This document shows, piece after piece, positions 1,093 through 24,323 of a DNA stretch of 24,323 nucleotides. Source of the stretch: Macrostomum lignano. Lineage: Eukaryota. Position numbers and translations under genes: made by a program. The first letter of the stretch is position 1. Every line of letters starts with the position of its first letter. A model generated the notes under the pieces. It saw only the letters and a list, made by a program, of their open reading frames with translations. It ran no database searches and was not told the origin of the DNA. The stretch is taken from NCBI GenBank assembly GCA_002269645.1, contig NIVC01000964.1, forward strand, positions 1 to 24,323, read 5' to 3'.

Positions 1093-1476
1093 GATTCAAG
1101 TTTAGCGCACTAATTTAAGCTTGTCACCCTTTCGTACCAAAGGCCCATTAAAGATCGCGCTGTCCCCCAGCGCTTGCACAAGCGAAATGTCAGCTGGCCA
1201 TCCATGCACGACAGCAAGACAAGGGAAATGTCACGCTTGGCCTGGCAATTGGGATTCGTATTTCACTGCAATCCCTCCTGTTTCAGAGACAGCCTCCCGA
1301 TGGGCTGGGGTGGCAAGGGAAGTCAGCAAGAGTGCCTGGATCGGCAACTGCGCTTGCGCACTGGAAACTGAGATTTGCGATTGATGAATTGCTTTATCAG
1401 AGTCCTGCATCCTGCTCAATAAACTTGACTGTCTTATGATATGGAATAATGGGTTTTTGCTCTATGGATGAAATAT

Positions 1477-3994: not shown

Positions 3995-4131
3995 AAAGCG
4001 GATGAGCTGTTAGCTATGATGTTATTTGTACACAAGCAGATTCCGCAATTCAATGTGTGCTCAAGGTGAGACGAAAGTGTACGCTGTCTTTTCTCATCTG
4101 AGGTTTTTTTCTCGCCGAGTTCTCTTGCCCA

Positions 4132-6843
4132 TCAGATGTGGAAGTTCAGGCAGTTCATCAGCTCCTGGCCCTTGCGGGTGGACATCGCGTCCTTGAACTC
4201 TCTTTTTGTCAGCGTGTCCCTGGAAGCCTGCGGGATGGCCAGCGTGCCAGTTGAGAGTGCATTTATCATCGGGTTTTCTAATCCACAAAACCTGCGCCGA
4301 CTTCCCTACTGAACCAATCACGATCGCATTCTATCGGAATTGTTTGCGAACTACTTTAAGTAGTATTGAAGCTGCATTTTCCTAACCCAATTCATTCTGA
4401 ACAGCTGTAAAAATTAACGGTCACCTGAACTCCTGTTCCACTAGCTTTCAAAAACTCCCAGCCTTCACAATCCCCAGCCTTCACAATCCCCAACCTTCAC
4501 AATCTCTAGCCTTCACAATCCCCAACCTTCACAATCTCTAGCCTTCACAATCCCCAACCTTCACAATCTCTAGCCTTCACAATCCCCAGCCTTCACAATC
4601 CCCAACCTTCACAATGCCCAGCCTTTGCAAACCCTAGCCTTCACCATCCCCAGCCCTCACCATCCCCAGCCCTCACCATCCCCAGCCCTCACCATCCCCA
4701 GCCTTCACCATCCCCAGCCCTCACCATCCCAGCCCTCACCATCCCCAGCCTTCACTCAAGCTGCTCACCAGAGTGGGAAAATACTCCTCCAGGTCCCAGA
4801 CTCGCTCGGCATTGTTGGCGATGCGGCTGGCAGTTCGGATGGCGCGGTTCATTTCCTCGACGCTCACCTGGCCGTCGCCATTGAAGTCCATCATCTGGAA
4901 CAGGTCTGCGGCGGGTGCAGCAGGAACAGTTTAGACACAGTTGAGACACAGTTGAGACACAGTTGAGACACAGTTGAGACACAGTTGAGACACAGTTGAG
5001 ACACAGTTGAGACACAGTTGAGACACAGTTGAGACACAGTTGAGACACAGTTGAGACACAGTTGAGACACAGTTGAGACACAGTTGAGACACAGTTGAGA
5101 CACAGTTGAGACACAGTTGAGACACAGTTGAGACACAGTTGAGACACAGTTGAGACACAGTTGAGACACAGTTGAGACACAGTTGAGACACAGTTGAGAC
5201 ACAATTTAAGACACATTGAAAACAACACTGCAGGGACACATTGAAGACAACACTGCAGGGACACATTGAAGACAACACTGCAGGGACACATTGAGGACAA
5301 CACTGCAGGGACACATTGAGGACAACACTGCAGGGACACATTGAAAACAACACTGCAGGGACACATTGAAGACAACACTGCAGGGACACATTGAGGACAA
5401 CACTGCAGGGACACATTGAAAACAACACTGCAGGGACACATTGAAGACAACACTGCAGGGACACATTAAAGACAACACTGCAGGGACACATTGAAGACAG
5501 CACTGCAGGGACACATTGAAGACAACACTGCAGGGACACATTGAAGACAACACTGCAGGGACACATTGAACTTATTGAAGACAACACTGCAGGGACACAT
5601 TGAAGACAACACTGCAGGGACACATTAAAGACAACACTGCAGGGACACATTGAAGACAACACTGCAGGGACACATTGAAGACAACACTGCAGGGACACAT
5701 TGAACTTATTGAAGACAACACTGCAGGGACACATTAAAGACAACACTGCAGGGACACATTGAAGACAACACTGCAGGGACACATTGAACTTATTGAAGAC
5801 AACACTGCAGGGACACATTGAAGACAACACTGCAGGGACACATTAAAGACAACACTGCAGGGACACATTGAAGACAACACTGCAGGGACACATTGAACTT
5901 ATTGAAGACAACACTGCAGGGACGCAAGTGTCCAGAAATGAACTTACAGTCGATTTTCTTCTCCATCGGCAGCTTCGAGCTGTACACCATGGAGATGGAG
6001 AACTCGTAGAAGTCGATACTGCCGTCCTTGTTCAGGTCCAGCATATCGAACACGGAGTCCCACAGTTTCTTGTCGCTGATGGGAGGGCATATGGGGAATT
6101 CATTTTCAAGCTAATAATTGCTGATCCCATCTCCTGTAAGACCATCCCCCACACCCAACATCAAGCTTACAATGGCTGGCCATGAAGTGAGCGCTTGATG
6201 GTCTCGTGAAACTGATGCCGCGACAGGCTGTCCCTGTTGTTGGTCAACTGGAAGAAGCGCTTCATCATGTCGCCTGTCTCCGCTTCGGAGACTGGAAAGC
6301 AGGCGGTGACGCACTAGTTATAGATGCACATATGGATATAGGCAAACTTCTAGGGTTGGCAAACTTTTTTACGCTCGTACTACAAGGGCCAGATAGAGAA
6401 CCCAGCGCATGACTGCGGGCCAGAGGAGGGGAGAGAGGAGAGAGAATAGAGAAGAGAGGAGAGATGAGAGATAGGAGAAAGGAAAGGCGAGGGGACGACA
6501 GGTGAGGCGAGAGGAAAGTGAGAAGACGAGAGGAGAGGAAATATGAAATGGGAGAATGAGAGGAGAGAAGGGAGAGGAGAGAAAAGAGAGCTGAGCAGAG
6601 ACATGGACCTTGAGCGGGCCGGATTGCTATTGTGAATTTTCAAAGAACCCAAGGGCCAGATAGAGAGGCTTTGCGGGCCGCACGTGGCCTGCGGGTCGGA
6701 GTTTGCCGACCCCTCCACACCATGTGTGAGCGTGCCGCTGCGAACGTATTCGTGCTCAGGGACCAGCGGATACTGGTCGGTGACTTACGTTTCAACTCGC
6801 CCTGCACCTTCTTCATGCCGTCGCGACTGTGGCTGTGTCCCAT
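4132..6843 (-). CDS. N-myristoylated EF-hand Ca2+ sensor (NCS/recoverin/calcineurin-B-like/calaxin group), 178 aa, 5 exons: 6843-6789, 6291-6171, 6075-5948, 4905-4769, 4227-4132
   Basis: All four introns are GT..AG and phase-compatible, giving 537 nt. Protein: MGHSHSRDGMKKVQGELKLSEAETGDMMKRFFQLTNNRDSLSRHQFHETIKRSLHGQPFDKKLWDSVFDMLDLNKDGSIDFYEFSISMVYSSKLPMEKKIDYLFQMMDFNGDGQVSVEEMNRAIRTASRIANNAERVWDLEEYFPTLASRDTLTKREFKDAMSTRKGQELMNCLNFHI*. It has an MGxxxS motif and canonical EF loops DLNKDGSIDFYE and DFNGDGQVSVEE. Confidence 0.92.
4457..4755. repeat. 16-bp minisatellite (AGCCTTCACAATCCCC, variants CCCT/CACC), ~19 copies, in intron 4 of the EF-hand gene
   Basis: Read directly; ends ~12 nt from the splice donor at 4768. 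Confidence 0.93.
4927..5203. repeat. 11-bp minisatellite (GAGACACAGTT), ~25 near-perfect copies, in intron 3
   Basis: Read directly; the 11-aa period in ORFs 4891..5202 and 4752..5453 is an artefact of it. Confidence 0.97.
5205..5922. repeat. 25-bp minisatellite (GACACATTGAAGACAACACTGCAGG), ~27 copies, some with a 9-bp insertion (CTTATTGAA), in intron 3
   Basis: Read directly; abuts the 11-bp array. Confidence 0.96.
6350..6715. mobile_element. Degenerate hAT (Charlie/Tip100-like) MITE with an internal GA-rich tract, in intron 1
   Basis: Imperfect TIRs CTAGGGTTGGCAAACT (6350) and AGTTTGCCGACCCCTC (6700-6715). Internal AAGGGCCAGATAG and GCGGGCCGCA motifs are typical of MER58/MER5-like hAT MITEs. 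CAAGGGCCAGATAGAGA occurs twice around a purine-rich tract (~6421-6600). No 8-bp TSD is visible. Confidence 0.6.
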
Positions 6844-7446
6844 GGCTGACTGTCTGACCGCGCGCGAGAATCAAAATCGCAGAGGCGCTGAAAGCAACTG
6901 CTGTTGTGCCGGACAAACTCAATTTTGCCAGCACCTTTACGCTAGCGCCGCTTTTCAAAGACAGAGAGTTGTCATTTTTCCGTGCTCAACCGGTGTACAC
7001 TCCGTGCGAAGCTGTTTGAGACTCGGTTTGAGAATGCGGTGGAAGAGAGGAGAGCTGGGCAAGGCGGGGTGGGCGGTTTGAGTTGTAAACTCAAACGAAG
7101 ATGGCCTCATCAGAGCTAAAAGTAGCTCTGAAACAGCTGCAGTCGACATCACTCTCGACCCATTGTTCACCGCTGCGAGTGGGAGGCTCGGTGCGCAGGC
7201 TGCAGAAAGCCAAGCAGCTCTGCCGAGCTCCGATTCTGAATCTCAGCTGCGGCCTTCACCCAATGTGACCCAAGTATGAACTCCAGTTTCGGAATCTGTT
7301 TTCAAATTGAGACTTGAACGCTGCAAAAAAATATACCTTCTGCATTTCATATTTCATAGTAAATATGAGCGTATTTTGCTCTCATGACATCTATGTGGTA
7401 CCCGTCATCTATGCCGACTTTGGGTCGCTGTACACAAACTTAGTGC

Positions 7447-7447
<1 letters not shown>

Positions 7448-7509
<62 letters not shown>

Positions 7510-7514
7510 GCCTT

Positions 7515-7557
<43 letters not shown>

Positions 7558-7694
7558 GCCTTTCTGTCTGTCTGTCTGTCTGTCTGTCTGCCTGTCTGTC
7601 TGTCTGTCTGTCTGTCTGCCTGTCTGCCTTTCTGTCTGTCTGTCTGTCTGTCTGCCTGCCTGTCTGTCTGTCTGTCTGTCTGTCTGTCTGCCTT

Positions 7695-7773
<79 letters not shown>

Positions 7774-7805
7774 GTCTGCCTTTCTGTCTGTCCGTCTGTC
7801 TGTCC

Positions 7806-7841
<36 letters not shown>

Positions 7842-7869
7842 GCCTTTCTGTCTGTCTGTCTGTCTGTCC

Positions 7870-7907
<38 letters not shown>

Positions 7908-7922
7908 CTGTCTGTCTGTCTC
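7448..7922. repeat. (TCTG)n microsatellite, ~475 bp, interrupted by GCCTT/GCCT/CCGT variants, followed by a T-rich tract to ~8000
   Basis: Read directly; ORFs 7314..8138 and 7448..8089 are artefacts. Confidence 0.98.
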
Positions 7923-9368
7923 TTTACAATTTTTTACAAAAAATTTTTTTTACATTTTTTTCTTTTTTTTCTTTTTTACAATTTTTTACTTTTTACAATT
8001 TACAACTCATTCGAAAATTTTCGGTGGAGGCGAGGCCACCTGACCTTGACTACTCAACTGGGACAAAAACCTGGACCCGGTGCTTTTGAAGTTCTCCGTT
8101 ACTCTTTACCGTCAAAACAGATACGCTTGCACATGTAACGAATCACTGGCCTCTACGAAAATCCAGGGTTTGAGCGCAGGTCAGCCGCGCTAGAGCCGCA
8201 CAAGCTGCTCGGATAAAAGTTGACATTGCTGGGATCAGCTGACTCTCGTCAGATGACTCTGCGGTGCTGTAGACAGTGCTGCAAGCAAAATGCCATACCA
8301 GGAACTTGTATGAACTTGAACATCGCACGAATGGGTTACAACTGTTGAGTTGCTGTTTACCCAAGAGGATAAATCAACAGTGCGCTTAAAAAACAAGCAG
8401 ATACGGTGGACGATTGACACCCGACACTGAGCAAAGTTGCGGAGGCCAAAGTCAAAGCGCGGGGTGGCGAATTGTGGCCGGGACAGAATCATGCTGCGTC
8501 TGCGGTTAGGCCAAATACGAGAATTCAGAGTTAGGGAATGATATCCGTGACGAAGGAAAAGTAAGCTACGAAATTTGGCACAAAAACGCAGGTTAGCCGT
8601 GTGCGGCTGTGTCCTCCGCTTTCAGAAAACTGCAAGCCATTCAGCCCAGGGCCAAGAAGCTCAGCGGTAAACGTGCCCGACTCTCAAACCCAAGTCACAG
8701 AGTGTACATGCCTGACGGTTAGAAAGTCAGGACCGCTGTACATCCTGGGTGAGCGTGTGCGTGAGTGCGTGTCTGCGTACAGTATTCGTATGTTCTCCGG
8801 AGTCAGCGGAAAGGACAGAATTTTTCAAGGTGTTGCAGCAGTCCGGCAGCAAATCTTACTCTTATGAGCTGACACCTCGAAGAAAACACGCAAGGACCAA
8901 ACACCGTTCGAATCATGGCCAGGTTATACTTAGTCGGAAAGTCAAAAATCAAAATTCAGTTAAACAGTTTGAGTTCCGGCTTCTGAATATCGAGCTGAGC
9001 CACGATTGATCCCTTCCTCATGACAATGGGCCGCTACTCCGCCTTTGAAAAGCCACCATCGATAAATTTCCCTCTTTGAAGCTGAGCAACCTGATGCGAT
9101 TTAGAAGTCTGCAATTCGGGTGTGGTCAAAAAAAGTTAGCTCGTAAAATCGAATTTTTGAATCGCGTAGTGGAAATCGAATTCCAAGGAAGAATTCAGCC
9201 GAATTTTTGTGTGTCGAATTTCAGCCGGTTGTGGGAGACTATAAAATTCTCACGGGCTCTTTGCAGTTGCGAGCCCTGCAATCTGGGAAAGCTCAGGCGG
9301 CTTGCTCAAGTGAAGACTTCACCAACTGCAGGAGGCCAGCTGCTGTAAGCTCCTCGGTTTGCTCTGTA

Positions 9369-9599: not shown

Positions 9600-10421
9600 A
9601 TGATGGACGGCGACTTGGATGCGAGAATTCGCGCTGCGGCCAGCGTCTTGTGGAAGTACCCGCCGCTTGTGCTGCTCAGCTTGTGCTGGCTGGGGAACTG
9701 CCTCTCCTTCCTGGTGCTGTCCAGGCCCGCCATGAGGGACAACAGCGTCAGCGTCTACCTGCGCTTCATCGCCCTGGCCGACACGGCCACCACCACGGTG
9801 GGCCTCGGCCCGAGAGTCGTTCAGCAGTGGGCGGTCGGAGCCGCAGCTTTCGAAGAGTTGAGCAACTTCACCTGCAAGCTCCACCGCTTTCTGTTGTTCG
9901 GCTGCGGAGACCTGGCCATCTGGTGCCTCACAATGCTCACTGTTGACCGGCTGGTCATCGTGAAGCTGCCGCTCCGGGCTGGCACGTGGTGAGTCTGGGA
10001 GCAGCTAAATGAGCGATTTAGCATTGCCGAACTGCAAAGGAAACATCGTCTAAAGCAACAGTCGCTAATTTTCCTAATTTGATTTGCATGCAGGTGCAGC
10101 AAGTCGCGGGCCCGAAATATCTGCTTGTGCATCACGCTGCTCGGCATCGGTAAGAACCTCAGCTCGCTGTGGAGCCGCGGTGAGCGCTGGGAGCTCCGTC
10201 CTGCCGCGTCGGCCAACGGAACCGGCTCGCTCGCGCCCGCCCTGACCGCCAAATGCGGCCAGCTCGTTGAGTTCGACTTCTACGAGAACTACGTCCGCAC
10301 CTGGCTCGGATTCAGCACCTACTTCTTCGGGCCGCTGCTGGTCATCGCTGTGAGCAACGCCCTGATTGTCCGGCAGCTGCTGCTCTCTCGGAAGCGTCGA
10401 CAGGCCATGCAGGAGGGCCAC

Positions 10422-10453
<32 letters not shown>

Positions 10454-10937
10454 AAAGCAGTCGGCCGATGACACAAACAGCAGCATGACCCGCATGATGC
10501 TGCTGGTGACGCTGATGTACGTTGTGCTGATCACGCCGAGCATGTCAATGTACATCTCGGCTCCGTACTGGCCGAGCTACAGTCCGTTTCCAGCTTGCCA
10601 AGAGTTGGCCTCTGCAGCAACGGACGTGCTGGTGTATTCCAACCACACGATGAACTTCTTCATGTACGTGCTCAGCGGCAAAAAGTTCCGAGACGAGCTC
10701 GTGGACGCGCTGCTCTGCCGCTCGGACAGGAGCCGCCGCAGCCGCTACTCGGCCAACTCCGATCCCGGATGTCGAGCCGAGCTCCTCCGGTTTCCCGGGC
10801 TTCGCAGCTGCAGACTGTCGCCTCAACCCCGGCTGCTCCTGACCTGTGATCTGATGGATAATGCAACATTGAAGCCGACTGCGAATGCCGATGTCTCGAG
10901 AGTCCGTAGATGCGTTCTTAAAGGTGGTTTTGGGTGA
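9600..10937 (+). CDS. Class A (rhodopsin-like) GPCR, invertebrate peptide-receptor type (FMRFamide/sex-peptide/TRH-receptor-like orphan), ~410 aa, 2 exons: 9600-9988, 10094-10937
   Basis: The 105-nt intron (TG|gtgagt...tgcag|G) joins PLRAGTW to CSKSRARNIC in frame. Motifs: GN (TM1), IALAD (TM2), C..K..DRL (TM3, DRY variant), ECL2 Cys, P in TM5, ITP (TM6), NHTMNFFMY.LSGKKFR (TM7/H8). The N-terminus may extend via an upstream exon: the frame is open from 9555 and includes an NSS sequon. Confidence 0.92.
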
Positions 10938-11929: not shown

Positions 11930-12941
11930 TTAAATAAAATCCGTGAACAGACACTCGAACTCCTTCATTGAATGCTCATAGCGAAACGGATAGGGCGCTC
12001 CCGGCCAGAAGTAGTAGATCCCCTGGCTGTCCGTAGCACTTTTGTTGTACGCATCCGGGTACTGGTAGTACAGACCGTTCGGGTTGAAGCAGGCGCAACT
12101 GTTGAACCACCAGCCTCCGTCGTACACTCGCGCACAGTTGACACTGCTGTTGTCGTTGTCCATGTCGAATGTGGAGAAGCTTTGATTGTTGAGAAACTTC
12201 ATGTCCGTGAAGCTGCACTGCCCCATCGAGGAGAGGCTCGATTCCAGCGGTCCGAGCAGCAGTCGGTACAGCTTGTCGGAGCCGGCGACTAGGAAGCGCT
12301 CGTTCTCGGCCCAGAACGGCTGGTCCTGCCACGTTCTCAGCTCCCAGCGGACTCGGCGCAGTCCATCCTCGGTGGCGGCGTGGATGGTGTCCAGGCCCAG
12401 CCAGAAGTTGCGGTGCTCGTCCTGGCCAAACGAGGCCTGGTACTCGGCCCAGTTGCGATCGAACCGCACGGAACCGTCGACGCGGTGCTGGAAGGTGCGC
12501 CAACAGAACTTTCGGTCCAGATGTGTCGGCCGTCTGAGCTGAAATGAGAGAGCGAAATGACCGCAATGGTCAGGAATGCCCAGCTACCCAAACCTCAGCA
12601 GCACAGCTACTGAATTTTCATCCGTCTGGCCTCACCCACAGCCGCGCTCCCTGCGAGACGTATCGGCACTTCCTGCAGCCGGACGGCCCCCATCGGCACC
12701 GGTAGAGGCGGCACAGTCCGTCCTCCTCCGAGAAGTCAGCGGCGTCCGCGGTACTCAGACTGGCTTTCATCAGACATAAGACATTGCTGGGAACGGAGAT
12801 GCTCAGCAGAGTCGAGTACTCGCTCAGACTGTCGAACCACCTATCCCAGACCGTTATTTTGCTCGTTGACTCTTGGGCGAGACCGAAGGCAGGAAGGCAG
12901 AGACACAGCGACAGAAGCGAGTTGACAGTGCCGTGCGACAT
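11930..12941 (-). CDS. Secreted fibrinogen-related-domain (FReD; ficolin/angiopoietin-like) protein, ~304 aa, 2 exons: 12941-12636, 12538-11930
   Basis: Signal-peptide-like start MSHGTVNSLLSLCLCLPAFGLA. Phase-0 intron TGG|gtgagg...tttcag|CTC. FReD motifs: WRTFQHRVDGSVRFDRNWAEYQASFG, FWLGLD, FSTFDMDND, NCA...GGWWFNSC..FNPNGLY. Confidence 0.92.
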
Positions 12942-13216: not shown

Positions 13217-13842
13217 GATCTGAATTTGCCGAACCGCTTTGCTATTTTAGTAGTGTCAGTTTTTGTTTGAGCAAGCAGCAATTTTTATCGCAACATCTCT
13301 TCCATAGCTGCCTGTGAGACTGAGCAGCGAAGACGAAACGTGTGCGACTCTCGCATCAAATTCGATTGCACGCGACTACGCATTAATTCGAATTAAGCGC
13401 ATGGCAGCTAGGAGGGCTGCATGAGTAGACGAAGATTCGATGTTGCACTTTACCAGATGCTGAGAAAACAAGAATAACGAAAAAAGTAAACTTCCACTTT
13501 CTGCTACCATTTTGGACAGTGAGTGTACGGCAATGCATCTATGAGTATTTTACACCGTGCACTTGGCATTTACGTGTGCACTGAGCCCTCAGCATCCAAG
13601 CCCAAACACTTCATCGAGTTCAGTACGGTCCCGCGCACGTATTGAAGATTGCCCACGTACAGCAATTGTACATCCCATTGTGAGTAGTACGCAAGAGTGA
13701 CGTGGGTTGCAGTACGCGTTACTCGATGAGTAAGTATCATATTATTAGGCAGTAAAGCTAAGGATAAATGGCTTGTTAAATCAACCAGTTTACAAGCGCG
13801 ATCACTTACTCCTAGGGCTCTAGTATTTTTACTCGAATAATT

Positions 13843-16059
13843 ATGGCCATGTCTGCCGAGCTACAGAAGACAGTCGTTAAAATTGCGTCCGTTAAGCCTT
13901 CAGAGCATAAACGGGATGAACCACATTTATCTGGCCAACCATTTTTAGGTTTCTATGATAATTACCGGTATTGGCAGGAGCATCATTTCCCTCGCCCAAT
14001 GTACGGCTACAAAGATCATTATAAGTATGGATGGCCAAGTATCGAAGAGGGTAAGAGCTACAGCAAAATTTTAATCTCTAATTGCTTGAATGTAGCAACT
14101 GTGATTATTTTGACATAATTTATTTGGCGAACTATTTTTAGATTCCGATTATTATAAGTTCCTATCATATTTTCTGGAATCTGCCAGGCAGGGAGGAACA
14201 ACTCCCGAACCGGACCCAATGTCCGGCTACAAAGGTCATTATAAAGGATTTGTGGTCACCACCTCGGACGGCGAAAAGTACCTGTTCGAAGAGGGTGAGT
14301 AAAAGCCACTGCAAAATTTAATCTCTAAATTGCTTGAATGTAGCAACTGTGATGATGATAAATATTATTATTGATGATGTTCGTCTTAACTTGTTTGGAC
14401 ATCGGTGCAAGTAAATGCCGCGACCCGAAGAAATAAGTTCGTGCCGTTCCTGTTTGTTCTGCTGCTTGACTGGGTGCTGCGGACTGCTCTCTCCGACCAA
14501 TGGCGGCTTTCTGCTGCGGCGAAGCGTGGGTCGACGCCAACCGTAGAGACGGCTCAGCCTGTTAGGCTACGCCGACGATCTCGCCCTGCTGTCCTCAACT
14601 GTTTGCTGACTGGTCGACCGACTGGTCGCTGTAGAGTCGATTGTCGGGCTTGTGATCAACACTGAGAAGTCCATCGGGCTCTGTGCGCCGGGCGACATCA
14701 AATTAAAAATTTTACGCGGAGGCGCTGACGGACTTTTTATTAGAGGCTGAAGCTTGGGCGCCCTGTCACACTCCGACAGGCGCCCTGACGAACTACGTCG
14801 TACGTCGATGTCAGACGTCCAGGCACACACTCAAACAGGAGTGTAGAGAGGCTCTAACTTTATTTATCGTTAGGAAAGTACACTTCACTGGGCCTTGGGA
14901 GTTGAACGTCTAGACATTAATTGCACGAACACAGCCAAGCCGAGATTCAAATTTAGGCCTAACAATACATTCCTTGTGACTACTGCATTTGGAATTGAGT
15001 CTGGTCCGCGGGCATGTAAGAGCGCCGCGCTGGACCACACCAGGCTACGGTCCTCTGGTGGCCCGGACTACGTTCGCGCCCTGGCTCTGAGATGCGCCCT
15101 GTGACGCAGAATTTTTTAACTGAGTGTCAGCGTATTTTTGTTGCTATTACTGATAGGAACCAACTAAATCTAAAACAAACTATTTTTTATAAAATTTAAT
15201 GAATCATTAACGAACAGGCGTAGCGCCGGACCAAATGAAAGAGTTGCATCGCATTGGTGAAATACGCATCGTAGACATCGGTAAAAGGCTGCCTTCTGGC
15301 TTCGAGGTCGTCGAAGAAAAAAATGTCAAACGTATCAACATCTCTCTGATGCAGTTGCTTATATTTATGGAGCTGCATAAGACAGTCGTTGAATTCGTGG
15401 TTGTCGAGCGACCACTCAGTACCAAGCGATCGGACAAAACGTCCGGCTACAAATTTCCTCATGAGGGGTGCGTGGTCACCACCGCCGATGGTCAAAAGTA
15501 CCTGATCGAAAAGGGTGAGTGCTGCATATTGTGGCCTCTAAACTGCTTGACTGTTGCAACTGTGATAAATAAATAAATAATGGATAAAACTGTCCAAATT
15601 ATCTTGGTTTTTAAAAATTTAACAAAACACTGACGAACAGGCGTAGCGCCGGACCACATGGAGGAGCTGCACCGCATCGGTGGCGAAAAGGGCAGCCGCA
15701 TTGTCAAGATAGGCAAGGAGCTGCCTCTTAATTTCCGGATTGTCAAACCAATAAAGATCAAACGCACTGACGTCACGCTGATGCAGCTGCTGGAGGCGAG
15801 CGGAGAAGTCTACAGCAGTCTCTGTAGCAACTGCTGGAATGCTACTGAGAGCATGAAGAGAGTTGTGACAGGGGAGTCGCAGTTGTCGTGGCAGTCACAG
15901 GCCGGAATTGGTGCAGTTAAATTCATTATGGCCGGGTTGCTCAGCTTTTTCGCGGTAAGATTTCACAGTCACAAATGTCGAATTTGGCCAGAGAAGTGCT
16001 TGCATCATTCTCAAAGTCCCAAGGTTGGCTTTCTTACGAATTTTGTCAATGGGGCTTAG
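13843..16059 (+). CDS. Chimeric member of a tandem uncharacterised family (candidate permuted papain-like/LRAT-PPPDE fold). Model exons: 13843-14050, 14142-14294, 15218-15514, 15641-15954 (or read-through to the stop at 16059, 358 aa)
   Basis: All three introns are GT..AG and phase 1, and the spliced frame is open. The last module keeps PHEGCVVTTADGQKYLIEKG and YSSLCSNCW, then a hydrophobic IGAVKFIMAGLLSFFA. Whether the four exons form one transcript is inferred. Exons 15218-15954 alone are better supported. Confidence 0.6.
14430..14800 (+). mobile_element. Degenerate non-LTR (RTE-like) reverse transcriptase fragment inside an intron
   Basis: Reads PFLFVLLLDWVLRTAL, then after a frameshift LGYADDLALLSST.*LVDRLVAV..IVGLVINTEKS. 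That is RT domains 4-6 with YADD, a frameshift and an in-frame stop. Confidence 0.8.
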
Positions 16060-16789
16060 TGCAATTAGTCATTCATGAGAGCCGACCCAAGAGCTGCACA
16101 GTGTGCCCACTGGCTGACGAAGAAGTTCGGGAGAGTGAGTGATGTGAATAAGGCAGCAAATGTTCTGTAGACGGTATCCCCTGTTTCTCGATTCCCAATT
16201 GCATGCCGCTGAACAACTTCAACTCTCATTTACAGCGCCGGTGAGACATCGGGACTCTGCCGGCTTTCTCGGGTCCTAAACGGCTGCGGGAACTCTAACT
16301 GTTTAAACAAAGCTGTTTAACTTACTTTAAACTGAAAACCCTCGTTTTTGTCACTACTAGCATAGATTCAATTTTAGTATATAGGATTTGTATCCAAGTT
16401 ATATCATCGTTAAGAATACATTCGGCCCACTCATACTCGAGGGATTCCTTTTTTGTCTCTGAATGTTGTCTGATTACGCAATTTGCTGTGACCAAAATCC
16501 TTGGACATTTTTTAGTCAGCTCCCAAATCTCTAGCTTTTTCTTTATATTTGTTCTCATACGATAATTAAACTGGGGTAACTGTCTACGGAGGAAGAACCA
16601 CAAACAAACAGTTAACACGTTTCAATCGTGTCAAAAATCCGCAACATACAGTCCAGTCCGCACAGGTGCGAAAATTTATAAAAGTTAAGATTTTGGTTAG
16701 TAAATTGAAGGGGAAATCCCAGTGTTTTGTTGCAAATTTTCGTCACTTGAATGAAAGCAAACTTTTCCCAACAGTCGCCATCGGTTTAA

Positions 16790-17144
16790 AGGGGCCTGTC
16801 AGCTTAAGCTCATAAAGTGGAGCCCGAGTAACCTATGCACACAAATGATATGCCATTCAGCTCACAATGACACTAGGAAGCTGGGTTTGGCAAAAAGCGA
16901 CAAAATTGGACTTGGAAGAATAAGCAAGGGGATAATTAAGGAACTATTTACTATTATGTCAACTTAAGCTCATAAAGTAGAGTCACTATTATCAGCTTTT
17001 GCTTGTTTTACCCTATCCCAAGTCAAATTTTCGTCGCTATTTTGCCAAAACTAGCTTCCTAGTGTCATTGTGAGCAGAATGACATACTGTATCATTTGTG
17101 TGCATAGGTTACTCGGGCTCCACTTTATGAGTTGACAGGGCCCT
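16790..17144. mobile_element. 355-bp palindromic MITE, Kolobok/T2 type, with TTAA target-site duplication
   Basis: TTAA|AGGGGCCTGTCA... at 16786-16790 and ...TGACAGGGCCCT|TTAA at 17144-17148. Imperfect TIRs of ~150 bp share CTCATAAAGTGGAGCCCGAGTAACCTATGCACACAAATGATA and CTCACAATGACACTAGGAAGCT. TTAA plus AGG termini is the Kolobok/T2 signature. Confidence 0.88.
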
Positions 17145-17897
17145 TTAATGCGGTCCCCAGGCAAGCTTATTAAAATGAATGGTTCTTTGCCGCTTTAGTT
17201 TAATAAAACTGCAGTACTAATGCAGGTCTCACTCAAATTTGTGCGAGCCCTGTCTGCGATTATCTGTTTCCCTCTTATTTATCCATACCTTAAGAATAAA
17301 CAAAATTATTAAGAAGCGGCGCTACCATTACAACAGTAGAAAACTTTTTTTCATGCGTCAAATATGTTTAAGAAAATGTCTTAAGCCAGTAGCGTCCGAA
17401 CAGCCGTCCATTAAATAAAACGGGTGCAACTCGCACATCAAGCCAGCGTCAATTCGACGCAAGGCTGAAATAATTCGGATTTAGCACAGTTTTAGGTTAT
17501 ACATGTAGATTGCAGATGAAGATTAGGCATTGCACTGTATACCATATGCTAAGAAAACAAGAAAAAAGAAAGAAGTGAAGTTCCACCTTCTCCTACGTTT
17601 TGAACAGTGAGTGTACAATTCATACTAGCTGAAATTACATTCAAGCCCAGACAAGTACATTTTGGACAGTGTACAATCCCGCGCGCGTATTGAAGTGCGC
17701 AATCTAACTGTACAGTAATGCCAGGGTGCTTGGTCTGCAGCGGACACCAGTCGATGAGTAAGTTCCTTGTTATTAGAGAGTAAACCTAATGATAAATGGC
17801 TTGTTAAATTAACCAGTTTAGGAGCGCGCTCGGCTACTTTCACAGCTCCATACTACAGCAGCAGAAAGTAAAGAAACAATACAAATTCCTCGCAATT

Positions 17898-19125
17898 ATG
17901 ACCGCGCATGACGAGCTGCAGAAGATAGTCGTTGAATTCGTGGTTGTCGAGCGACCACTCAATACCAAGCGACCGGACCAAGCGTCCGGCCACAAAGTTC
18001 CTCATGAGGGGTGCGTGGTCACCACAGCCGATGGCCAAAAATACCTGATCGAAAAGGGTGAGTGCTGCCCATTGTGGCCCTAAAAGTGCTTGACTGTTGC
18101 AACTGTGATAATTGACATAATACATAGTAGTATAGTGGATAGAACTTACAAATATATCCTCGTTCTGCAACAATTACTGAACCATTTACGAACAGGCGTA
18201 GCGCCGGATCACATGGAGGAGCTGCACCGCATCGGTGGCGAAAAGGGCAGCCGCATTGTGAAGATCGGCAAGAATCTGCCTCCTAACTTCCGGGTTGTCA
18301 GGCCAGTAAAGATCAAAAACACTGACGTCACGCTGATGCAGCTGCTGGAAGCGAGTGGTAAAGACTACAACTGGCTCTGCAGCAACTGCTGGAATTCTAC
18401 TGAGAGCATACAGAGAGTTTTGACAGAGAAGGCGCAGCTGCCGTGGCAGTTCAAGGCCGGACTTGACGCTGGAATAATGGGCGTCATTGCGATGGTGCTG
18501 TTCGTCTTGATTTTTCGCGGCGGTGCCATGGTAAGATTCCTTCATCATTTAGAATCATTTAGCTTTTCTCTGGTTTACAATTTGCGACAAGGTCTGGCAC
18601 TCTTGGCCCAAAACTCCGATTATGGTCGTTAGCTTAATTTGTTTTGTTTTTCAACAGAATTTATTGGTACTGGGCTTTAGTGCAAATTACAATCATGAGC
18701 AACTCAATGAGATTTGCGAGAGAGTGCAAACCACTCGTTTTGCCCACTCGTTTGAGATCAGTGTAGTCCCAAGTAGCAAATGCTGTGTAGATGCTACCTC
18801 CTGTTCCTCGATTCCCTATTGCATGCCGATGAACAACTCAACTCTCATTTACAGACCAACTGAGACATCCTGCCGGTTCTCGGGTCCTAAACGGCAACGG
18901 GAACTCAAACTGTTTAAAAAATTAAACTATAATTTGTTAGGCTGTCTGCCCCGCGCACACTCTCCTCACCTCCGCACTGTGCCTATAAATTCACTACGAA
19001 TATTCCCCCAAATTTCTTCACTCTTTCGCTCGTGTTCTCTGGTTTTCTCGCTAGAATACGCTTGTACACGATTCCAAATACAAGCGTTTTGGAGTATCCC
19101 GAAATTCTATCCCAAACTGAGTTAG
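17898..19125 (+). CDS. Intact member of the tandem family (candidate permuted papain-like NlpC/P60, LRAT/PPPDE-type, plus TM segment). Exons: 17898-18057, 18196-18530, and a possible third exon 18658-19125 (320 aa), or read-through stop at 18632 (198 aa)
   Basis: The phase-1 GT..AG intron joins MTAHDELQKIVVEFVVVERPLNTKRPDQASGHKVPHEGCVVTTADGQKYLIEK to GVAPDHMEELHRIG...TLMQLLEASGKDYNWLCSNCWNSTESIQRVL...GIMGVIAMVLFVLIF. The first two exons are well supported and the third is tentative. The fold call comes from motif recognition only. Confidence 0.72.
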
Positions 19126-19535: not shown

Positions 19536-21406
19536 TTATTCTCTTTCCGAACAGTCTCTCCTCTGAAACTTGTTTAATTTTGTTTATCTTTCACTGTGGG
19601 ATTTTGTGTAAGAAAATATCGTAGCATTAATAGTGTGTTGCATTCACGGATGAAGGAGACGTGGGTTCTATTCGTCGATCAAGAACGTCTGTCGTGAAAA
19701 ACCCATAGAGAAAGATTTTTTAGCTTGGCAGAGTGAATGAAAAATCCCACCCGTCTGTCTTATGGTTAGGCGAAGGGGAAGTTACTGGTCGCATTGCCAA
19801 TTTTTCGTACTTTAATAGAAAAAAAATTCTTTCCAACGTCTGAGCTGCATCTCTGCAAGTGGCCCTCAAGCAAACGCATTAGCGTCGGGGGTCTCCCGGC
19901 ACTGATATTTTCGAAAATAAAAGTCCTGCATCGAGTGAATTTGAGCATGAGTTGCGTCATGATTATTGGGGTGTACCACTGTACCTACAATAAATACATG
20001 TAGATGAGAGAGTCGGTAAACTCAGTACAGAGTCGTATCTTGTCTACCTACCAAAGGTCCTTGACGAGGTGCCAGCATGAGGGGGTGATAAAAGAGAGGA
20101 TTATATGAAACGGATTAGCAAAATCTAATTGAGGAATCCAAATATATTTGTTACATTTTTAGAATGCAGCTAACTTTTTGTTGGGGATTTCCAAACCTCA
20201 AGAACATTTTTCCTGCGTCATAACGGAGCAACGCAGGCACACAAAGACGTCAATAAGCAAGTCCTCCAAGACAGTCCATTCGAATTCATCTGGCTGAGCT
20301 TTTGTATCTGTTGGGGTTGTACTTTGGTTTTTCATGTTGTTTCACTTGTCTCTCACACCACTTGGTATAATTCTTGCGCTATCGTGAACCTGAAAATCTT
20401 GAGGCTGATGGTTTAGGAAGTGATGCATTTGTCTACATTGTTCGATGTGTCTACTCGTACTAAGAACCAATGATGCTGTTCGTTGCAAACATGACGTTGA
20501 CTGTTTTCAGACAACATTTTTCGCGACAGGATTCATCAAATTGAGATGCCGTTTAGATATTCGCGCCTGGGTTGAAGTATTTGACGCCCAGGCCAGATCC
20601 TCGAAGATACCGACGAGAGACGACCTCACGACGCTTCTGGCGCTCTGCCAGCTCATGGTTGCTCCAAATCTGCGATGGCGAAATCAAGCGCCTAGCGTTT
20701 GTGGAGCCGCTGCAGATTGCTGAGCAGCCTTCATGTCGATGCGCCAGAGGCGAAACCGACCAGCTGCCGCGCTCAGGGAGCAAGCCGGTATGCTTCGCCT
20801 GGGGTGGCTGGACCCCGCCGAGCGCTCATCAAGATGCGGCTCATTGCCGGTCCAACTCCATCAGGAACAAGGTGCTGAGCGTGAAGAAAGAACTGACGGT
20901 CGATCAGGTCACAGATATGTTCAGCAGCTGCTGATGGTCAGCCTTTTCAGGCGTGGGTCACAGCTGCTGCTCACTCGACTCTCGTGGATTCGGTGGTGCA
21001 CCAGGCTAGGTCGCTGTCGACCGCGCGACCGTCTGATGAAGCTCACTGCCATCCGGATAGCCCGGCTCTGTCGAATTCGGTTATGAGGCATGAAGCAGCT
21101 TCGGACACCAGCGCTGTCAGCGTTGCGGGAGTCGCACCAGAGCCCGCTGACTGCGAGCCCTGAGAGCCACCTGCAATCGGGAAAGGCTGGCAGCCCGCGG
21201 TGAAGCGGAGGTCATCAGCCGCTGAGGCTCATTGAGCCGGACTTCGATGACTCGCTTGGAGCAAGGAAGCTCGAGGCGTGAAGCGAATCGAGAAGGACTG
21301 CGGTCGGGTGAGCACCTGTATGTTCCAAACCGCCTGCTCAGGTGTCAGAGTTAATCAAGCCCTGTGCTTGGGAATTAGCGGTGAAATATCAAAGAAATAC
21401 TCTACT

Positions 21407-21800
21407 CAGTGTGCAAGATCACAGTGTGCAGGATCACAGTGTGCAGGATCACAGTGTGCAGGATCACAGTGTGCAGGATCACAGTTGTGCAGGATCACAG
21501 TGTGCAGGATCACAGTGTGCAGGATCACAGTGTGCAGGATCACAGTGTGCAGGATCACAGTGTGCAGGATCACAGTGTGCAGGATCACAGTGTGCAGGAT
21601 CACAGTGTGCAGGATCACAGTGTGCAGGATCACAGTGTGCAGGATCACAGTGTGCAGGGATCACAGTGTGCAGGATCACAGTGTGCAGGATCACAGTGCT
21701 GCAGGATCACAGTGTGCAGGATCACAGTGGCAGGACTCACAGTGTGCAGGATCACAGTGTGCAGGATCACAGTGTGCAGGATCACAGTGTGCAGGATCAC
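21407..21800. repeat. 15-bp minisatellite (GATCACAGTGTGCAG), ~26 copies, inside the gypsy protease region
   Basis: Read directly; a few +1/-1 variants shift the frame; translates as SVQDH/AGSQC/CRITV repeats. Confidence 0.97.
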
Positions 21801-23045
21801 TGCTCGTTAATCTCACGAAGGATCTGGAATGAGCTCGGAAGGCCCCCGCTGAAGTCGGCGAAGTCGCGCATGCTGGCGTATGACGGACACGTTATGAGAC
21901 AGATGGGCGTTCTGGAATGCCTGGTGGAGACCACTGGCAACATCGGCCGCTTCAAGGCGGCAGAGCTGCCCGTCATCGACTGCCAACAGGAGTTTGGGCT
22001 GCTCGGCCGGAATCTGCTGGTCCTCGCACCGGTGCACCATGCCAGTTCTGATGAGTCAGCCGCCAGCAACAGGTATGAGAGCTTGTTGTTGGGAATATCT
22101 GGTGCTACGGGAGAAATCCGTCTTTGTGCTGGAGCTAGGCCAATTTTCCAGGCAGCCAGAGAACTGCCCTTAGCGCTGAAGCACTTGGTTAAGAAGGAGC
22201 TGGACCTGATGGAAAGTGCTGGAATCGTTGAGAAGGTGATGTCGTCGGAATGGGGCAGTCCAATTGTGGTGACGGTGAAGTCAGATCGGGCATCCGTGAG
22301 AATTTGTGGAGATTATTCGGCTGTTAATCGGTTGGTTCAAGACCAGACCTTCCTCACTCCCTCGATTGAGACAGCCTTTTCGAAAATGGCCAACAAGAAG
22401 CTGTTCTGTCGGTTGGACCTATCGGATGCGTACTATCAGGTTCCCCTGGATGAGGAATCGAAAGCGGTGACCACCATAAACACTCCGTTTGGTTGCTACA
22501 GGTTTAACCGGTTGCCGTATGGCATTAAGGTGTCGCCATCTGTTTTTCAACGTGTGATGGAAAAGCTCCTGGGAGACCATCCATGTGTCATAGTATATCA
22601 GGACGATGTGCTGATCGGTGCTGCGAGCCGGGCAGAGTTGCAGAAAATTAGGGAGCAGGTGCTCAACAAGTTAAAGGCCGCAAATGTCAAGATCAACGAG
22701 GCGAAGTGCGTGATGGAAGCCAACAGCCTGAAGTTTCTTGGTCACATTATTGATGATGAAGGAATAAAACCCGATCCGGGCATGGTGAAACGTGTGATGG
22801 ATGTCGAGGTGCCGAAGACCAAGAAAGATTTGGAGAGATTTCTAGGACTGGCTCAATTTTATGGACGGCTGGTTCCAAACTTTTCTGAGAAATGTCGGCC
22901 TCTTCAGGAGCTTCGCCGCGGTGACCGGGTCTTTGAATGGAACGCGGTGGCTGAGGCGGCATTTTCGGAGGTCAAAAGGAGTCTGGCCTCAAACCCGTGC
23001 ATCAAGCCGTTTGATGTTTTCCGCGCCTGTCTGTCTTCGAGTTGA
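21801..23045 (+). pseudogene. gypsy pol: protease C-half plus reverse transcriptase (largest open segment)
   Basis: ORF 21342..23045 after the repeat; YQDD catalytic motif; frameshifts into RNase H near 23015. Confidence 0.9.
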
Positions 23046-24323
23046 TGCGAGCGAGAAATCCTTGGGCGCGGTGCTGGTCCAGTCTGGACATCCCGTCATG
23101 TTCATGTCCAGGGCGCTCACACAGGCAGAAACCAACTACTCAAACATCGAGAGAGAAGCGCTGGCTATTGTTTGGGCGGTTGAACGAGCTCGAAAAATGT
23201 TGCTAGGGAAGAAATTCATTCTGCAGACCGATCACGAGCCTTTGAAGTTTATTCTGAATCCTTGCAAGAATCTTCCAAAGACTGTTTCTGCCAGACTAAC
23301 CCGGTGGGCTCTGCGGCTATCGGCTTATGATTACGAGATTGAATATGTGCCGGAAAGAAGATGCAGGATGCTGACGCTCTATCAAGGCTGAGCTTTGAAA
23401 CCTCGATCCTGAGACGGAGTCTGTTCATCAGACTGAGTTGATCACTGACGGAGGCTTGGTTACCGTGGAGGAGCTGAGAGAAAGTACTTCCCGGTGTTCA
23501 CTGCTTCAAAGACTCCAGCAGAGAATCAGGACAGGCCGGTGGGGTCAGGTCTCTCAGCTGGAGCGGCCGTACAAAGCGTGTCGGGAAGCGTTGTCTGTGG
23601 AGAACGGGCTGGTCATCCACGGTACCAGGGTGGTGCCTCCGACCATTCTCCGGCGGCGCATTTTGGAGACCGCGCATGATGAGGTGCACCCGAGCGCGGA
23701 AAATACGAAGGCCCATGTGTCTAAGGAGTTCTGGTAACCTGGACTGAATCGCGATGTCCGTCAGTTTGTTGAGCGTGTCAGCTCAGCTGTGCGCTGAAAG
23801 ACGCCGGTGGTTCAGCGGAAAATTGACATCTGGCCATCCGAGAGCGAGCCGTGGTCCCGGGTCCACATGGACCACTGTGAGGTGCCAGGAGTGGGCTTGC
23901 TACTGTTGCTGTCTGATGCATACTCGGGTTGGCCAGAAGCTGTCCAGGTCCCAGACAGGTCTGCGGGCAGTGTGCTGAGAGTGCTGAGAGCGGTGTTCGC
24001 CAGAAATGGAGTGCCTCGGACGCTAGTGTCGGATAATGCGCCCGAGTTCAGGTCGGAAAGAGTCTCGCAGTGGCTGAACAGTGTCGGCTGCCAGGAGATG
24101 CACACCCCACCGTACCATCCGGCATCGAACGGGCAGGCTGAGCGGTTGGTGAGGAGTCTCAAAGGCGGGCTGAAGACGTGGACGAAAGTGGTCCCATTTG
24201 ACCAGTTCCTGCAGAAATTGCTCCTAACCATTCGCACCAGCAGGCCTAGCGGGAATCGTTCCAGCTCGCCGGACATTCTCATGTGGGGACGCCGGCTGCG
24301 CCATCCGCCTGACGATGACCGAG

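What the first reader, a model, noticed from the sequence alone, without database searches (positions are those of the whole stretch)
13843..19125. Tandem family of uncharacterised membrane-anchored proteins with a permuted papain-like (His...Asn-Cys) signature
Seen: at least three related units, two of them with the full two-exon module. The module has V-V-E-R-P-L, then P-H-E-G-C-V-V-T-T-x-D-G-x-K-Y-L-I-E-K-G, then T-L-M-Q-L-L-E-A-S-G-x-x-Y-x-x-L-C-S-N-C-W, then a hydrophobic segment. Established: circularly permuted NlpC/P60 enzymes (LRAT/PLAAT-HRASLS, PPPDE/DeSI, YaeF/YiiX) place the catalytic His (HxG on a strand) before a third polar residue and the Cys in a Y-x-L-x-x-N-C motif; PLAATs also carry a C-terminal membrane anchor. 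Inference: this is a locally expanded lipid acyltransferase/phospholipase or isopeptidase family with a His/Glu/Cys triad (E in LIEKG). The ORF track misses it because an intron separates His from Cys. Its position beside a FReD lectin gene hints at a defence locus.
Basis: partly seen in the sequence, partly recalled or inferred. Interest (0 to 1): 0.78.

Follow-up and report, generated by a model that had tools for sequence, protein, structure and literature searches.

The report
Flatworm tail-anchored H-box/NC thiol-enzyme-like genes
Two neighbouring spliced genes of the flatworm Macrostomum lignano encode small membrane-anchored proteins of an undescribed family. The family most probably carries a rearranged papain-like (PLAAT/LRAT-type) His/Glu/Cys active site, but the evidence is convergent rather than strong and no activity has been shown.

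Summary
The window is a Macrostomum lignano contig. Splicing 17898-18057 to 18196-18530, plus a 9-nt third exon, reproduces the transcript-based GenBank model Mlig004476g3 exactly.

Upstream lies an unannotated chimeric gene (13843-16244). It is built from two degenerate exon-1 copies, a truncated exon-2 fused in frame to a third exon-1 copy, and a complete exon 2.

The family has no Pfam or PDB sequence match. An exhaustive HMM search found only M. lignano paralogues, a shark gene and two environmental sequences. K53, G108, Y111, N117 and C118 are invariant. His36 is kept in every complete member. Position 52 is Glu in the flatworm and His elsewhere.

An AlphaFold model (core pLDDT above 90) puts His36 at a strand start and Cys118 at a helix N-terminus, followed by a tail anchor. 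Its best structural matches belong to the permuted NlpC/P60 group:
- Aichivirus 2A H-box/NC (PDB, E 0.11, probability 0.92)
- a DUF4105-annotated virophage protein (E 1.5e-3)

Two uncharacterised giant-virus proteins match more strongly (E about 1e-6).

Profile-profile comparison with PLAAT and PPPDE is only motif-level, and a reversed decoy scores as well.

Verdict: a probable new divergent permuted papain-like family, with untested chemistry. The defence-locus idea is unsupported.

The parts
17823..17897 (+). Gene C, annotated 5' leader. It starts directly after an AG (..TTTAG|GAGCG..), which fits a splice or trans-splice acceptor.
   Evidence: Gene range 17823-18863. The N-terminal extension of P0001 is the translated leader. 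The acceptor reading is inference from the sequence.
17898..18057 (+). Gene C exon 1: Met1 to the first base of Gly54. It holds VVERPL, His36 (18003-18005) and Glu52 (18051-18053). The donor is AAGG|GTGAGT, phase 1.
18058..18195 (+). Gene C intron 1 (138 nt, GT..AG). It separates His36/Glu52 from Asn117-Cys118.
   Evidence: The same intron position occurs in paralogue P0003.
18196..18530 (+). Gene C exon 2: Gly54-Met165. It holds TLMQLLEASGKDYNWLCSNCW (Asn117-Cys118 at 18384-18389) and the tail-anchor segment, residues 142-160 (18459-18515).
18855..18863 (+). Gene C exon 3: ACC AAC TGA (Thr-Asn-stop).
   Evidence: The end of the annotated gene is at 18863.
13843..14050 (+). Gene A/B exon A1: start codon plus a degenerate exon-1-type copy. 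It has no His/GxVVTT motif and is phase 1. Its upstream blocks 13427-13528 and 13723-13803 are homologous to 17514-17616 and 17751-17831 upstream of gene C.
14142..14294 (+). Gene A/B exon A2: a second degenerate exon-1-type copy (..GHYKGFVVTTSDGEKYLFEEG). Tyr sits at the His36 position. The copy on the sister contig carries a 1-nt deletion.
15218..15514 (+). Chimeric exon. The front half of an exon-2-type copy (VAPDQMKELHRIG..SLMQLL, 15218-15366) is fused in frame to a full exon-1-type copy (MELHKTVVEFVVVERPL..PHEGCVVTTADGQKYLIEKG). The internal ATG is at 15367 and His at 15460-15462.
   Evidence: The HMM maps two consecutive half-domains in this one ORF.
15641..15954 (+). Unit B exon 2: a complete C-terminal half with SLCSNCW (Cys at 15832-15834) and a weaker hydrophobic tail.
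16236..16244 (+). Unit B exon 3: CGC CGG TGA. The 3' region 16155-16310 is homologous to 18775-18921 of gene C.

Best explanation
The region holds two tandem, spliced genes of a Macrostomum-expanded family of small proteins (about 155-190 aa).

Gene C (17823-18863) is expressed and already annotated. It encodes a 167-aa protein with no signal peptide, a globular domain of about 130 residues, and a hydrophobic helix 7 residues from the C-terminus. That makes it a tail-anchored protein with its domain on the cytosolic face of a membrane.

The domain is most probably a very divergent, circularly permuted NlpC/P60 (papain-like) domain of the H-box/NC type found in PLAAT/LRAT enzymes:
- His36 opens a beta-strand.
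- Glu52 lies on the neighbouring hairpin strand (His in distant relatives).
- Cys118 of an invariant Y-x-L-x3-N-C motif caps an alpha-helix.

Inferred mechanism, not shown: His36, oriented by Glu52, activates Cys118. Cys118 then forms a thioester acyl-enzyme with a membrane lipid and passes the acyl group to water (phospholipase A) or to an acceptor (acyltransferase).

Gene A/B (13843-16244) is an unannotated product of unequal recombination. It has two degenerate N-terminal half-domains and a truncated C-terminal half fused in frame to one complete unit. Its expression is unproven.

My sub-probabilities:
- permuted NlpC/P60 fold: about 0.75
- catalytically active thiol enzyme: about 0.55
- lipid substrate: about 0.4
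For: Gene model and organism:
- The spliced gene C is 100% identical to the transcript-based model Mlig004476g3.

Family and conservation:
- An exhaustive HMM search of 1.84 billion representatives gave M. lignano paralogues (E 3.6e-13 and 1.4e-5), a shark protein (1.6e-4) and two environmental proteins (9.2e-5 and 2.3e-4).
- In the 17-sequence alignment K53, G108, Y111, N117 and C118 are invariant.
- His36 is present in every full-length member.
- Position 52 is Glu or His only.

Motif geometry:
- The Y-to-C spacing of 7 equals that of PLAAT3 (Y106-C113) and of PPPDE.
- A global profile alignment pairs H36 with H23, E52 with H35 and C118 with C113 of PLAAT3. The hairpin is 2 residues longer on each arm.

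Structure:
- The AF2 model has pLDDT 78 overall and above 90 in the core. It shows a six-stranded sheet followed by helices, with Cys118 as the first residue of helix 118-130 and a C-terminal helix 137-161.
- Foldseek against PDB: the top hit is Aichivirus A 2A, an H-box/NC homologue of PLAAT3 (E 0.11, probability 0.92, TM 0.55 on the target, 126 columns).
- It is again the only whole-domain hit for an independent model of the distant member P0007.
- Foldseek against BFVD: a Tupanvirus protein (E 1e-6), a Moumouvirus protein (E 8e-6) and a DUF4105-annotated virophage protein (E 1.5e-3), all at probability 1.0. Kobuvirus polyprotein and Ac81-like hits are weak.
- DUF4105, LRAT and Ac81 are classified as papain-like/NlpC-P60 families. 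DUF4105 and LRAT are placed in the permuted, lipid-acting group (PMC10318531, PMC12994826).

Other support:
- Sub-threshold Pfam hits of family members fall on the NC region of LRAT (E 0.019) and Peptidase_C97 (E 0.08 and 0.14).
- The tail anchor has KD19 2.41 at residues 142-160 with 7 residues after it. PLAAT3 has 2.08 with 10 residues after.
Against: - No window protein hits any Pfam, NCBIfam or PDB sequence model.
- No Foldseek PDB hit reaches E 1e-3, and PLAAT2/3/4, LRAT chimera, DeSI and YiiX structures are absent from the top 50 for both models.
- hhalign against a PLAAT profile gives P = 0.011 without the TM segment. A reversed-column decoy gives P = 0.006, so the profile signal is not above control. 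However, 0 of 40 column shuffles reached the real score.
- The best solved match, picornaviral 2A H/NC, keeps the H and NC motifs yet has a rearranged, non-catalytic active site. Motif conservation therefore does not prove catalysis.
- It is not known whether the aligned part of the 853-aa virophage protein is its DUF4105 domain.
- His-Cys distance was not measurable here.
- dN/dS between recent copies is high: 0.9-1.0 for C against its sister-contig copy (20 substitutions) and 0.72 for B against C.
- Gene A/B is absent from all protein collections. Its exon A2 is frameshifted on the sister contig.
Confidence: 0.55

Rival explanations
1. A non-catalytic H-box/NC protein. The domain descends from a PLAAT-like enzyme but, as in picornavirus 2A H/NC proteins, its topology is rearranged so that Cys and His cannot cooperate. 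It would then act as a membrane-associated scaffold or membrane-remodelling factor.
For: - The best and only whole-domain PDB match for both models is Aichivirus 2A.
- 2A H/NC proteins keep both motifs without a competent active site, and their predicted TM helix packs into the core.
- Constraint between recent copies is relaxed.
- The classical third His is replaced by Glu in all flatworm copies.
Against: - N117-C118 are invariant, and His36 is kept in every full-length member from flatworm to shark at about 30% overall identity.
- A Glu/His alternation at position 52 is what is expected for a His-orienting residue.
- The C-terminal helix has low pLDDT (45-58) and a hydropathy typical of a real tail anchor.
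Confidence: 0.15
2. A PPPDE/DeSI-like isopeptidase. It would be a permuted papain-fold Cys-His peptidase that removes ubiquitin, SUMO or another modifier from membrane-proximal substrates.
For: - The motif G-x2-Y-x-L-x3-N-C-x-N matches PPPDE (AY-L---NCN-F) as well as it matches LRAT.
- hhalign against a small PPPDE alignment gives P = 0.018 on exactly this motif.
- Two members give sub-threshold Peptidase_C97 hits (E 0.08 and 0.14).
Against: - Those scores are far below the Pfam cut-off (13 bits against 29.2 bits).
- No DeSI structure (2WP7, 3EBQ) appears among the Foldseek hits.
- PPPDE enzymes use a Cys-His dyad and are soluble. This family has a conserved third polar residue at the PLAAT His35 position and a PLAAT-like tail anchor.
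Confidence: 0.12
3. Not papain-like at all. It would be a lineage-specific small beta-sheet/helix domain whose H...NC pattern resembles the NlpC/P60 motifs by chance, and whose function does not involve thiol catalysis.
For: - There is no significant sequence or profile link to any known family.
- A reversed decoy equals the real hhalign score.
- All PDB Foldseek E-values are 0.1 or higher.
- The two strongest BFVD matches are themselves uncharacterised.
Against: Several independent weak lines point to the same superfamily:
- motif order and spacing
- Cys at a helix N-terminus in the model
- top PDB hit and several BFVD hits from permuted NlpC/P60 families
- sub-threshold LRAT and C97 hits on the NC region
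- a tail anchor
.
Confidence: 0.15

Closest known systems
PLAAT/HRASLS-LRAT family (Pfam PF04970), e.g. human PLAAT3
   Same: - Small size.
- The His-bearing beta-hairpin comes before the Cys helix (permuted order).
- Y-x-L-x3-N-C has the same Y-to-C spacing.
- A polar residue sits at the position aligned with His35.
- The C-terminal tail anchor lies 7-10 residues from the end.
   Different: - No Pfam hit.
- The EHF after NC is replaced by W/H/Y-N/D.
- The third residue is Glu in the flatworm.
- The hairpin is longer.
- There is an extra N-terminal strand with a conserved ERPL.
- Solved PLAAT structures are not among the top Foldseek hits.
Picornavirus 2A H-box/NC proteins (Aichivirus A 2A, PDB 7ZV1/7ZV6)
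   Same: This is the best solved structural match for both family models, and both motifs are conserved.
   Different: These are viral polyprotein segments with a rearranged, non-catalytic site. Here the genes are cellular and spliced. The match is weak (E 0.11-0.74, 10-15% identity).
DUF4105/Lnb (PF13387), permuted NlpC/P60 lipoprotein N-acyltransferase
   Same: A DUF4105-annotated virophage protein matches the model at Foldseek E 1.5e-3, probability 1.0, TM 0.50 on the query. The family is lipid-acting, permuted and has conserved His/Cys.
   Different: DUF4105 is bacterial or periplasmic and much larger. There is no sequence-level hit. Whether the aligned region is the DUF4105 domain was not verified.
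PPPDE/DeSI (Peptidase_C97, PF05903)
   Same: A permuted papain fold, with similar G..AY-L---NC motif spacing.
   Different: PPPDE enzymes are soluble, use a dyad only, and act as isopeptidases. Here there are only sub-threshold hits.

Membership tests
LRAT/PLAAT (PF04970) | Score above the Pfam gathering threshold (24.3 bits) | tested here: not met
   Window proteins give no hit. The best family member (P0007) scores 15.7 bits, E 0.019.
LRAT/PLAAT (PF04970) | Permuted order: H-box His on a strand N-terminal to the NC-motif Cys at a helix N-terminus | tested here: met
   His36 is at the start of strand 35-43. Cys118 is the first residue of helix 118-130 in the AF2 model. N117-C118 are invariant.
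LRAT/PLAAT (PF04970) | Cys-His-His triad (second His on the adjacent hairpin strand) | tested here: inconclusive
   The equivalent position is Glu52 in all flatworm copies and His in the shark, Logan and Tara members. The geometry was not measurable.
LRAT/PLAAT (PF04970) | C-terminal membrane anchor (PLAAT1-5) | tested here: met
   KD19 is 2.41 at residues 142-160 with 7 residues after, against 2.08 and 10 residues for PLAAT3. The anchor is weaker in unit B and absent in P0005, P0014 and the shark proteins.
LRAT/PLAAT (PF04970) | Fold superposes on solved PLAAT structures | tested here: inconclusive
   No PLAAT chain is in the top 50. The best hit is the PLAAT homologue Aichivirus 2A at E 0.11, probability 0.92.
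LRAT/PLAAT (PF04970) | Thioester acyl-enzyme; PLA1/2 or acyltransferase activity | not testable with these tools
   Needs biochemistry.
PPPDE/DeSI (PF05903) | Score above the Pfam gathering threshold (29.2 bits) | tested here: not met
   The best scores are 13.2 and 12.4 bits, in P0005 and P0007.
PPPDE/DeSI (PF05903) | Structural similarity to DeSI-1/PPPDE1 (2WP7, 3EBQ) | tested here: not met
   Neither is among the top 50 Foldseek PDB hits for either model.
Permuted NlpC/P60 superfamily (clan level) | Papain-like core with the His-bearing sheet preceding the Cys helix, and significant structural similarity to a member | tested here: inconclusive
   BFVD DUF4105-annotated protein at E 1.5e-3, probability 1.0. 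PDB 2A H/NC at probability 0.92 but E 0.11. The profile-profile score is not above a reversed decoy.
YaeF/YiiX (Peptidase_C92, PF05708) | Pfam or structural match | tested here: not met
   No hit at E up to 10 in Pfam, and none in the Foldseek top 50.

The most novel reading that the evidence does not exclude
The family is a previously unrecognised branch of H-box/NC proteins with a strikingly patchy range: one flatworm genus, elasmobranchs, marine eukaryote metagenomes and, by structure, Tupanvirus and Moumouvirus proteins. It would have moved between giant viruses and marine animals. In the flatworm it would have expanded under rapid evolution as a membrane-attacking or membrane-protecting lipid-modifying effector in host-virus conflict, parallel to the role of PLAAT3 in organelle rupture and picornavirus entry.
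Probability: 0.1. Interest if true: 0.7.

Novelty: new variant of a known kind. Interest (0 to 1): 0.4.

Why it matters
If confirmed, this adds an animal family to the permuted NlpC/P60 lipid-enzyme group that no current Pfam, NCBIfam or PDB sequence model detects.

- It carries a natural Glu-for-His swap at the third catalytic position.
- Membrane targeting varies within the family: a tail anchor in the flatworm and a signal peptide in sharks.
- M. lignano is a transgenic and RNAi-tractable model, so function can be tested directly.
- The chimeric A/B gene is a clean example of exon-level unequal recombination in a recently duplicated genome.

It is not a major surprise: the superfamily is large and known for extreme divergence.

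Tried and rejected
- Pfam, NCBIfam and PDB sequence searches with single proteins and with profiles returned only noise: DUF4379, TM1112, NAD kinase 2 and an ATP synthase model.
- The bacterial repeat proteins P0004, P0006 and P0010 from the exhaustive search were rejected as spurious. They are multi-repeat surface proteins that match 36-45 residue stretches.
- hhalign against a PLAAT profile and a small PPPDE alignment aligns the NC motif correctly. It was rejected as independent evidence because a reversed decoy scored as high.
- A second AF2 model, of the His/His/Cys member P0007, did not pull out PLAAT structures.
- An IMG/VR scan for viral relatives found none by sequence.
- The intron position is conserved within the flatworm family but not in the shark gene, so it says nothing about deep homology.
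- No paper or held supplement mentions Mlig004476 or the paralogue identifiers.
- The defence-locus idea was rejected. The FReD neighbour recurs only on the near-identical sister contig and not at the paralogue locus L003. The other neighbours are a GPCR, a retrotransposon and an amine oxidase.
- dN/dS on the sister-contig copies has too few substitutions to decide constraint.

Full report
**Origin and gene model**

The window is a 24,323-bp contig (NIVC01000964) of the free-living flatworm Macrostomum lignano. Joining 17898-18057 to 18196-18530 across a phase-1 GT..AG intron (AAGG|GTGAGT ... GAACAG|GC) gives an open 165-codon frame.

The product is 100% identical to GenBank 'hypothetical protein BOX15_Mlig004476g3, partial'. 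That gene occupies window 17823-18863. The protein ends ..GGAMTN, which fixes a 9-nt third exon at 18855-18863.

The Mlig_3_7 annotation was built from RNA-seq and assembled transcripts using StringTie, TACO, TBONE and TransDecoder (PMC5730564).

The annotated 5' end falls directly after an AG. This fits a splice or trans-splice acceptor, but that reading is my inference.

**The tandem array**

Self-comparison, tblastn and a six-frame HMM map show four exon-1-type copies and three exon-2-type copies.

- Unit C is complete.
- Unit B is complete: ATG at 15367, exon ends at 15514, exon 2 at 15641-15954, and a 9-nt exon at 16236-16244.
- Unit B's first exon is the back half of a longer exon (15218-15514). 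The front half of that exon is a truncated exon-2 copy ending ..SLMQLL, fused in frame.
- Upstream of it lie two degenerate exon-1 copies, A1 (13843-14050, with the start codon) and A2 (14142-14294).

All junctions are phase 1, and the frame is open for 326 codons from 13843 to the stop at 16244.

Only A1 has upstream blocks homologous to those of gene C: 13427-13528 matches 17514-17616, and 13723-13803 matches 17751-17831. A-B therefore looks like one chimeric gene made by unequal recombination.

Its status is uncertain, for three reasons:
- No protein collection contains it, although the annotation is expression-based.
- A2 has Tyr where His36 should be.
- On the sister contig NIVC01000963, A2 carries a 1-nt deletion (GG to G). 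This breaks the frame if A2 is included. It may be real or an assembly error.

The sister contig has the same A-B-C layout, at 97% DNA identity over A-B and 92% over C. This is consistent with the known recent genome duplication of this species.

**The family**

Single-sequence searches found only the two Mlig004476 copies. An exhaustive HMM search of 1.84 billion cluster representatives, followed by a profile search, recovered:
- six further M. lignano clusters (Mlig017153/000256, 022102, 015703, 018103, 012613, and one UniRef-only entry), all at about 30% identity;
- an uncharacterised protein of three sharks (Carcharodon, Mustelus, Cetorhinus);
- one Logan contig;
- a Tara ocean metagenome cluster.

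Three bacterial repeat proteins in the list are spurious.

In the 17-sequence alignment:
- K53, G108, Y111, N117 and C118 are invariant.
- P20, G46, L50, I51 and G54 are nearly invariant.
- His36 is present in every full-length member.
- Position 52 is Glu in all flatworm proteins and His in the shark, Logan and Tara proteins.

Paralogue P0003 has its intron at the same place, after LIEKG. The shark gene does not.

Flatworm members of the C and P0003 types end in a hydrophobic helix close to the C-terminus. For gene C, KD19 is 2.41 at residues 142-160 with 7 residues after it. Human PLAAT3 scores 2.08 with 10 residues after. The shark proteins instead start with a signal-peptide-like segment.

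**Is it a permuted papain-like domain?**

At the sequence level there is no significant link:
- The window proteins hit nothing in Pfam, NCBIfam or PDB sequences.
- Two relatives give sub-threshold hits to LRAT (E 0.019) and Peptidase_C97 (E 0.08 and 0.14), exactly over the NC region.
- hhalign against a PLAAT profile aligns G..Y-L---NC with PLAAT3 G101..Y106..N112-C113. P is 0.001 with the TM segments and 0.011 without them.
- A global alignment pairs His36 with His23, Glu52 with His35 and Cys118 with Cys113.
- A reversed decoy scores as well (P = 0.006), although none of 40 column shuffles does.

I therefore count the profile comparison as compatible with the hypothesis, not as proof of it.

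Structure gives more. The AF2 model of gene C has mean pLDDT 78, with the core above 90. It shows:
- strands 10-20, 35-43, 48-53, 62-66, 72-77 and 86-91;
- helices 100-107 and 118-130;
- a low-confidence C-terminal helix 137-161.

His36 opens the second strand. Glu52 is on its hairpin partner. Cys118 is the first helical residue, which is the classical arrangement for a papain-like nucleophile.

Foldseek against PDB gives nothing below E 1e-3. The top hit is Aichivirus A 2A (E 0.11, probability 0.92, 126 columns, TM 0.55 on the target). This is an H-box/NC protein homologous to PLAAT3.

An independent model of the distant member P0007 (pLDDT 77) again has that protein as its only whole-domain match, at E 0.74.

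Foldseek against BFVD gives:
- a Tupanvirus protein at E 1e-6;
- a Moumouvirus protein at E 8e-6;
- a DUF4105-annotated virophage protein at E 1.5e-3, all three at probability 1.0 and TM about 0.5 on the query;
- weaker kobuvirus polyprotein and Ac81-like hits.

DUF4105 (the Lnb lipoprotein N-acyltransferase), LRAT and Ac81 are all classified as papain-like/NlpC-P60 families. DUF4105 and LRAT sit in the permuted, lipid-acting group (PMC10318531, PMC12994826).

No confident match to any unrelated fold appeared.

**Mechanism**

The best-supported reading is a tail-anchored, cytosol-facing thiol enzyme of the H-box/NC type. His36, oriented by Glu52, would deprotonate Cys118. Cys118 would then form an acyl-thioester with a membrane lipid, leading to hydrolysis or transfer. 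Every step of this chemistry is inferred.

Caveats:
- Picornaviral 2A H/NC proteins conserve both motifs yet cannot catalyse.
- The PPPDE motif fits about as well as the LRAT motif.
- Recent copies show little purifying selection. dN/dS is 0.88 for C against its sister copy (5 synonymous and 15 non-synonymous changes, none in the first 79 residues). It is 0.72 for B against C. No motif residue differs among the intact copies.

**Context**

On the minus strand, 1.4 kb upstream of A1, lies a fibrinogen-related domain exon (11930-12469, Pfam E 3.8e-32). Further upstream is a rhodopsin-type GPCR, and downstream is an LTR-retrotransposon pol.

The FReD neighbour recurs only on the near-identical sister contig. 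It was not found within the 15.3-kb paralogue locus L003. The sister contig's other neighbour is an amine oxidase. I see no basis for calling this a defence locus.

**Verdict**

This is probably a new, highly divergent family of the permuted NlpC/P60 (PLAAT/LRAT-like) kind, with Glu as the third residue in the flatworm. Gene C is expressed, and the A/B gene is a chimeric neighbour that may be decaying. Interest is moderate.

Noticed in passing
window 435-1111, 1476-2799, 4441-4755, 4926-5926, 7444-7921, 21407-21800: Six blocks of tandem minisatellite repeats (80-97% identity between copies) fill much of the first 8 kb and lie just before the retrotransposon pol. They generate long spurious ORFs such as CLSVCLSV.. 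and SQLCLNCVSTV..
   Followed up: no
window 9600-10937 (+): A rhodopsin-family or Srw-like 7TM receptor split over two ORFs (7tm_1 E 8.7e-7 and 2.2e-9). It has a poly-Gln run in the third intracellular loop region. No gene was called from window 7823 onward apart from gene C; upstream of 7823 was not looked up.
   Followed up: partly
window 11930-12469 (-): A fibrinogen C-terminal domain exon (Pfam E 3.8e-32, profile positions 55-212). It is identical on the sister contig L002 at 4023-4559.
   Followed up: partly
window 21342-24323 (+): An LTR-retrotransposon pol running to the contig end. RT (RVT_1, E 2e-28) and RNase H (E 6e-32) lie in different frames, so it is probably a damaged copy.
   Followed up: partly
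window 16809-17131: An inverted repeat spanning about 320 bp (arms 42 nt at 100% and 47 nt at 91% complementarity) lies between units B and C. It looks like a MITE or hairpin element.
   Followed up: no
window 14400-14730 (+), inside the 923-nt intron of gene A/B: A degraded reverse-transcriptase fragment (..FLFVLLLDWVLR.. and ..LGYADDLALLS.. in two frames; RVT_1 E 0.072, sub-threshold). It explains why this intron is about 800 nt longer than its 126-138-nt counterparts.
   Followed up: partly
L002 6178-6346 versus window 14135-14300: A single-base deletion (CTGGAA to CTGAA) in exon A2 of the sister-contig copy. It frameshifts the A/B reading frame unless A2 is skipped. It may be a real lesion or a long-read assembly error.
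   Followed up: partly
L004 (Carcharodon carcharias CM029970.1), gene 8001-76988: The shark homologue is spread over about 69 kb in at least four coding exons. It begins with a signal-peptide-like segment instead of ending in a tail anchor, and it uses His at the position of Glu52.
   Followed up: partly
L003 (NIVC01001413.1) 1-729 and 6001-9330: Two paralogues of the family (184 aa and 186 aa) also lie in tandem, so local duplication is a general habit of this family.
   Followed up: no
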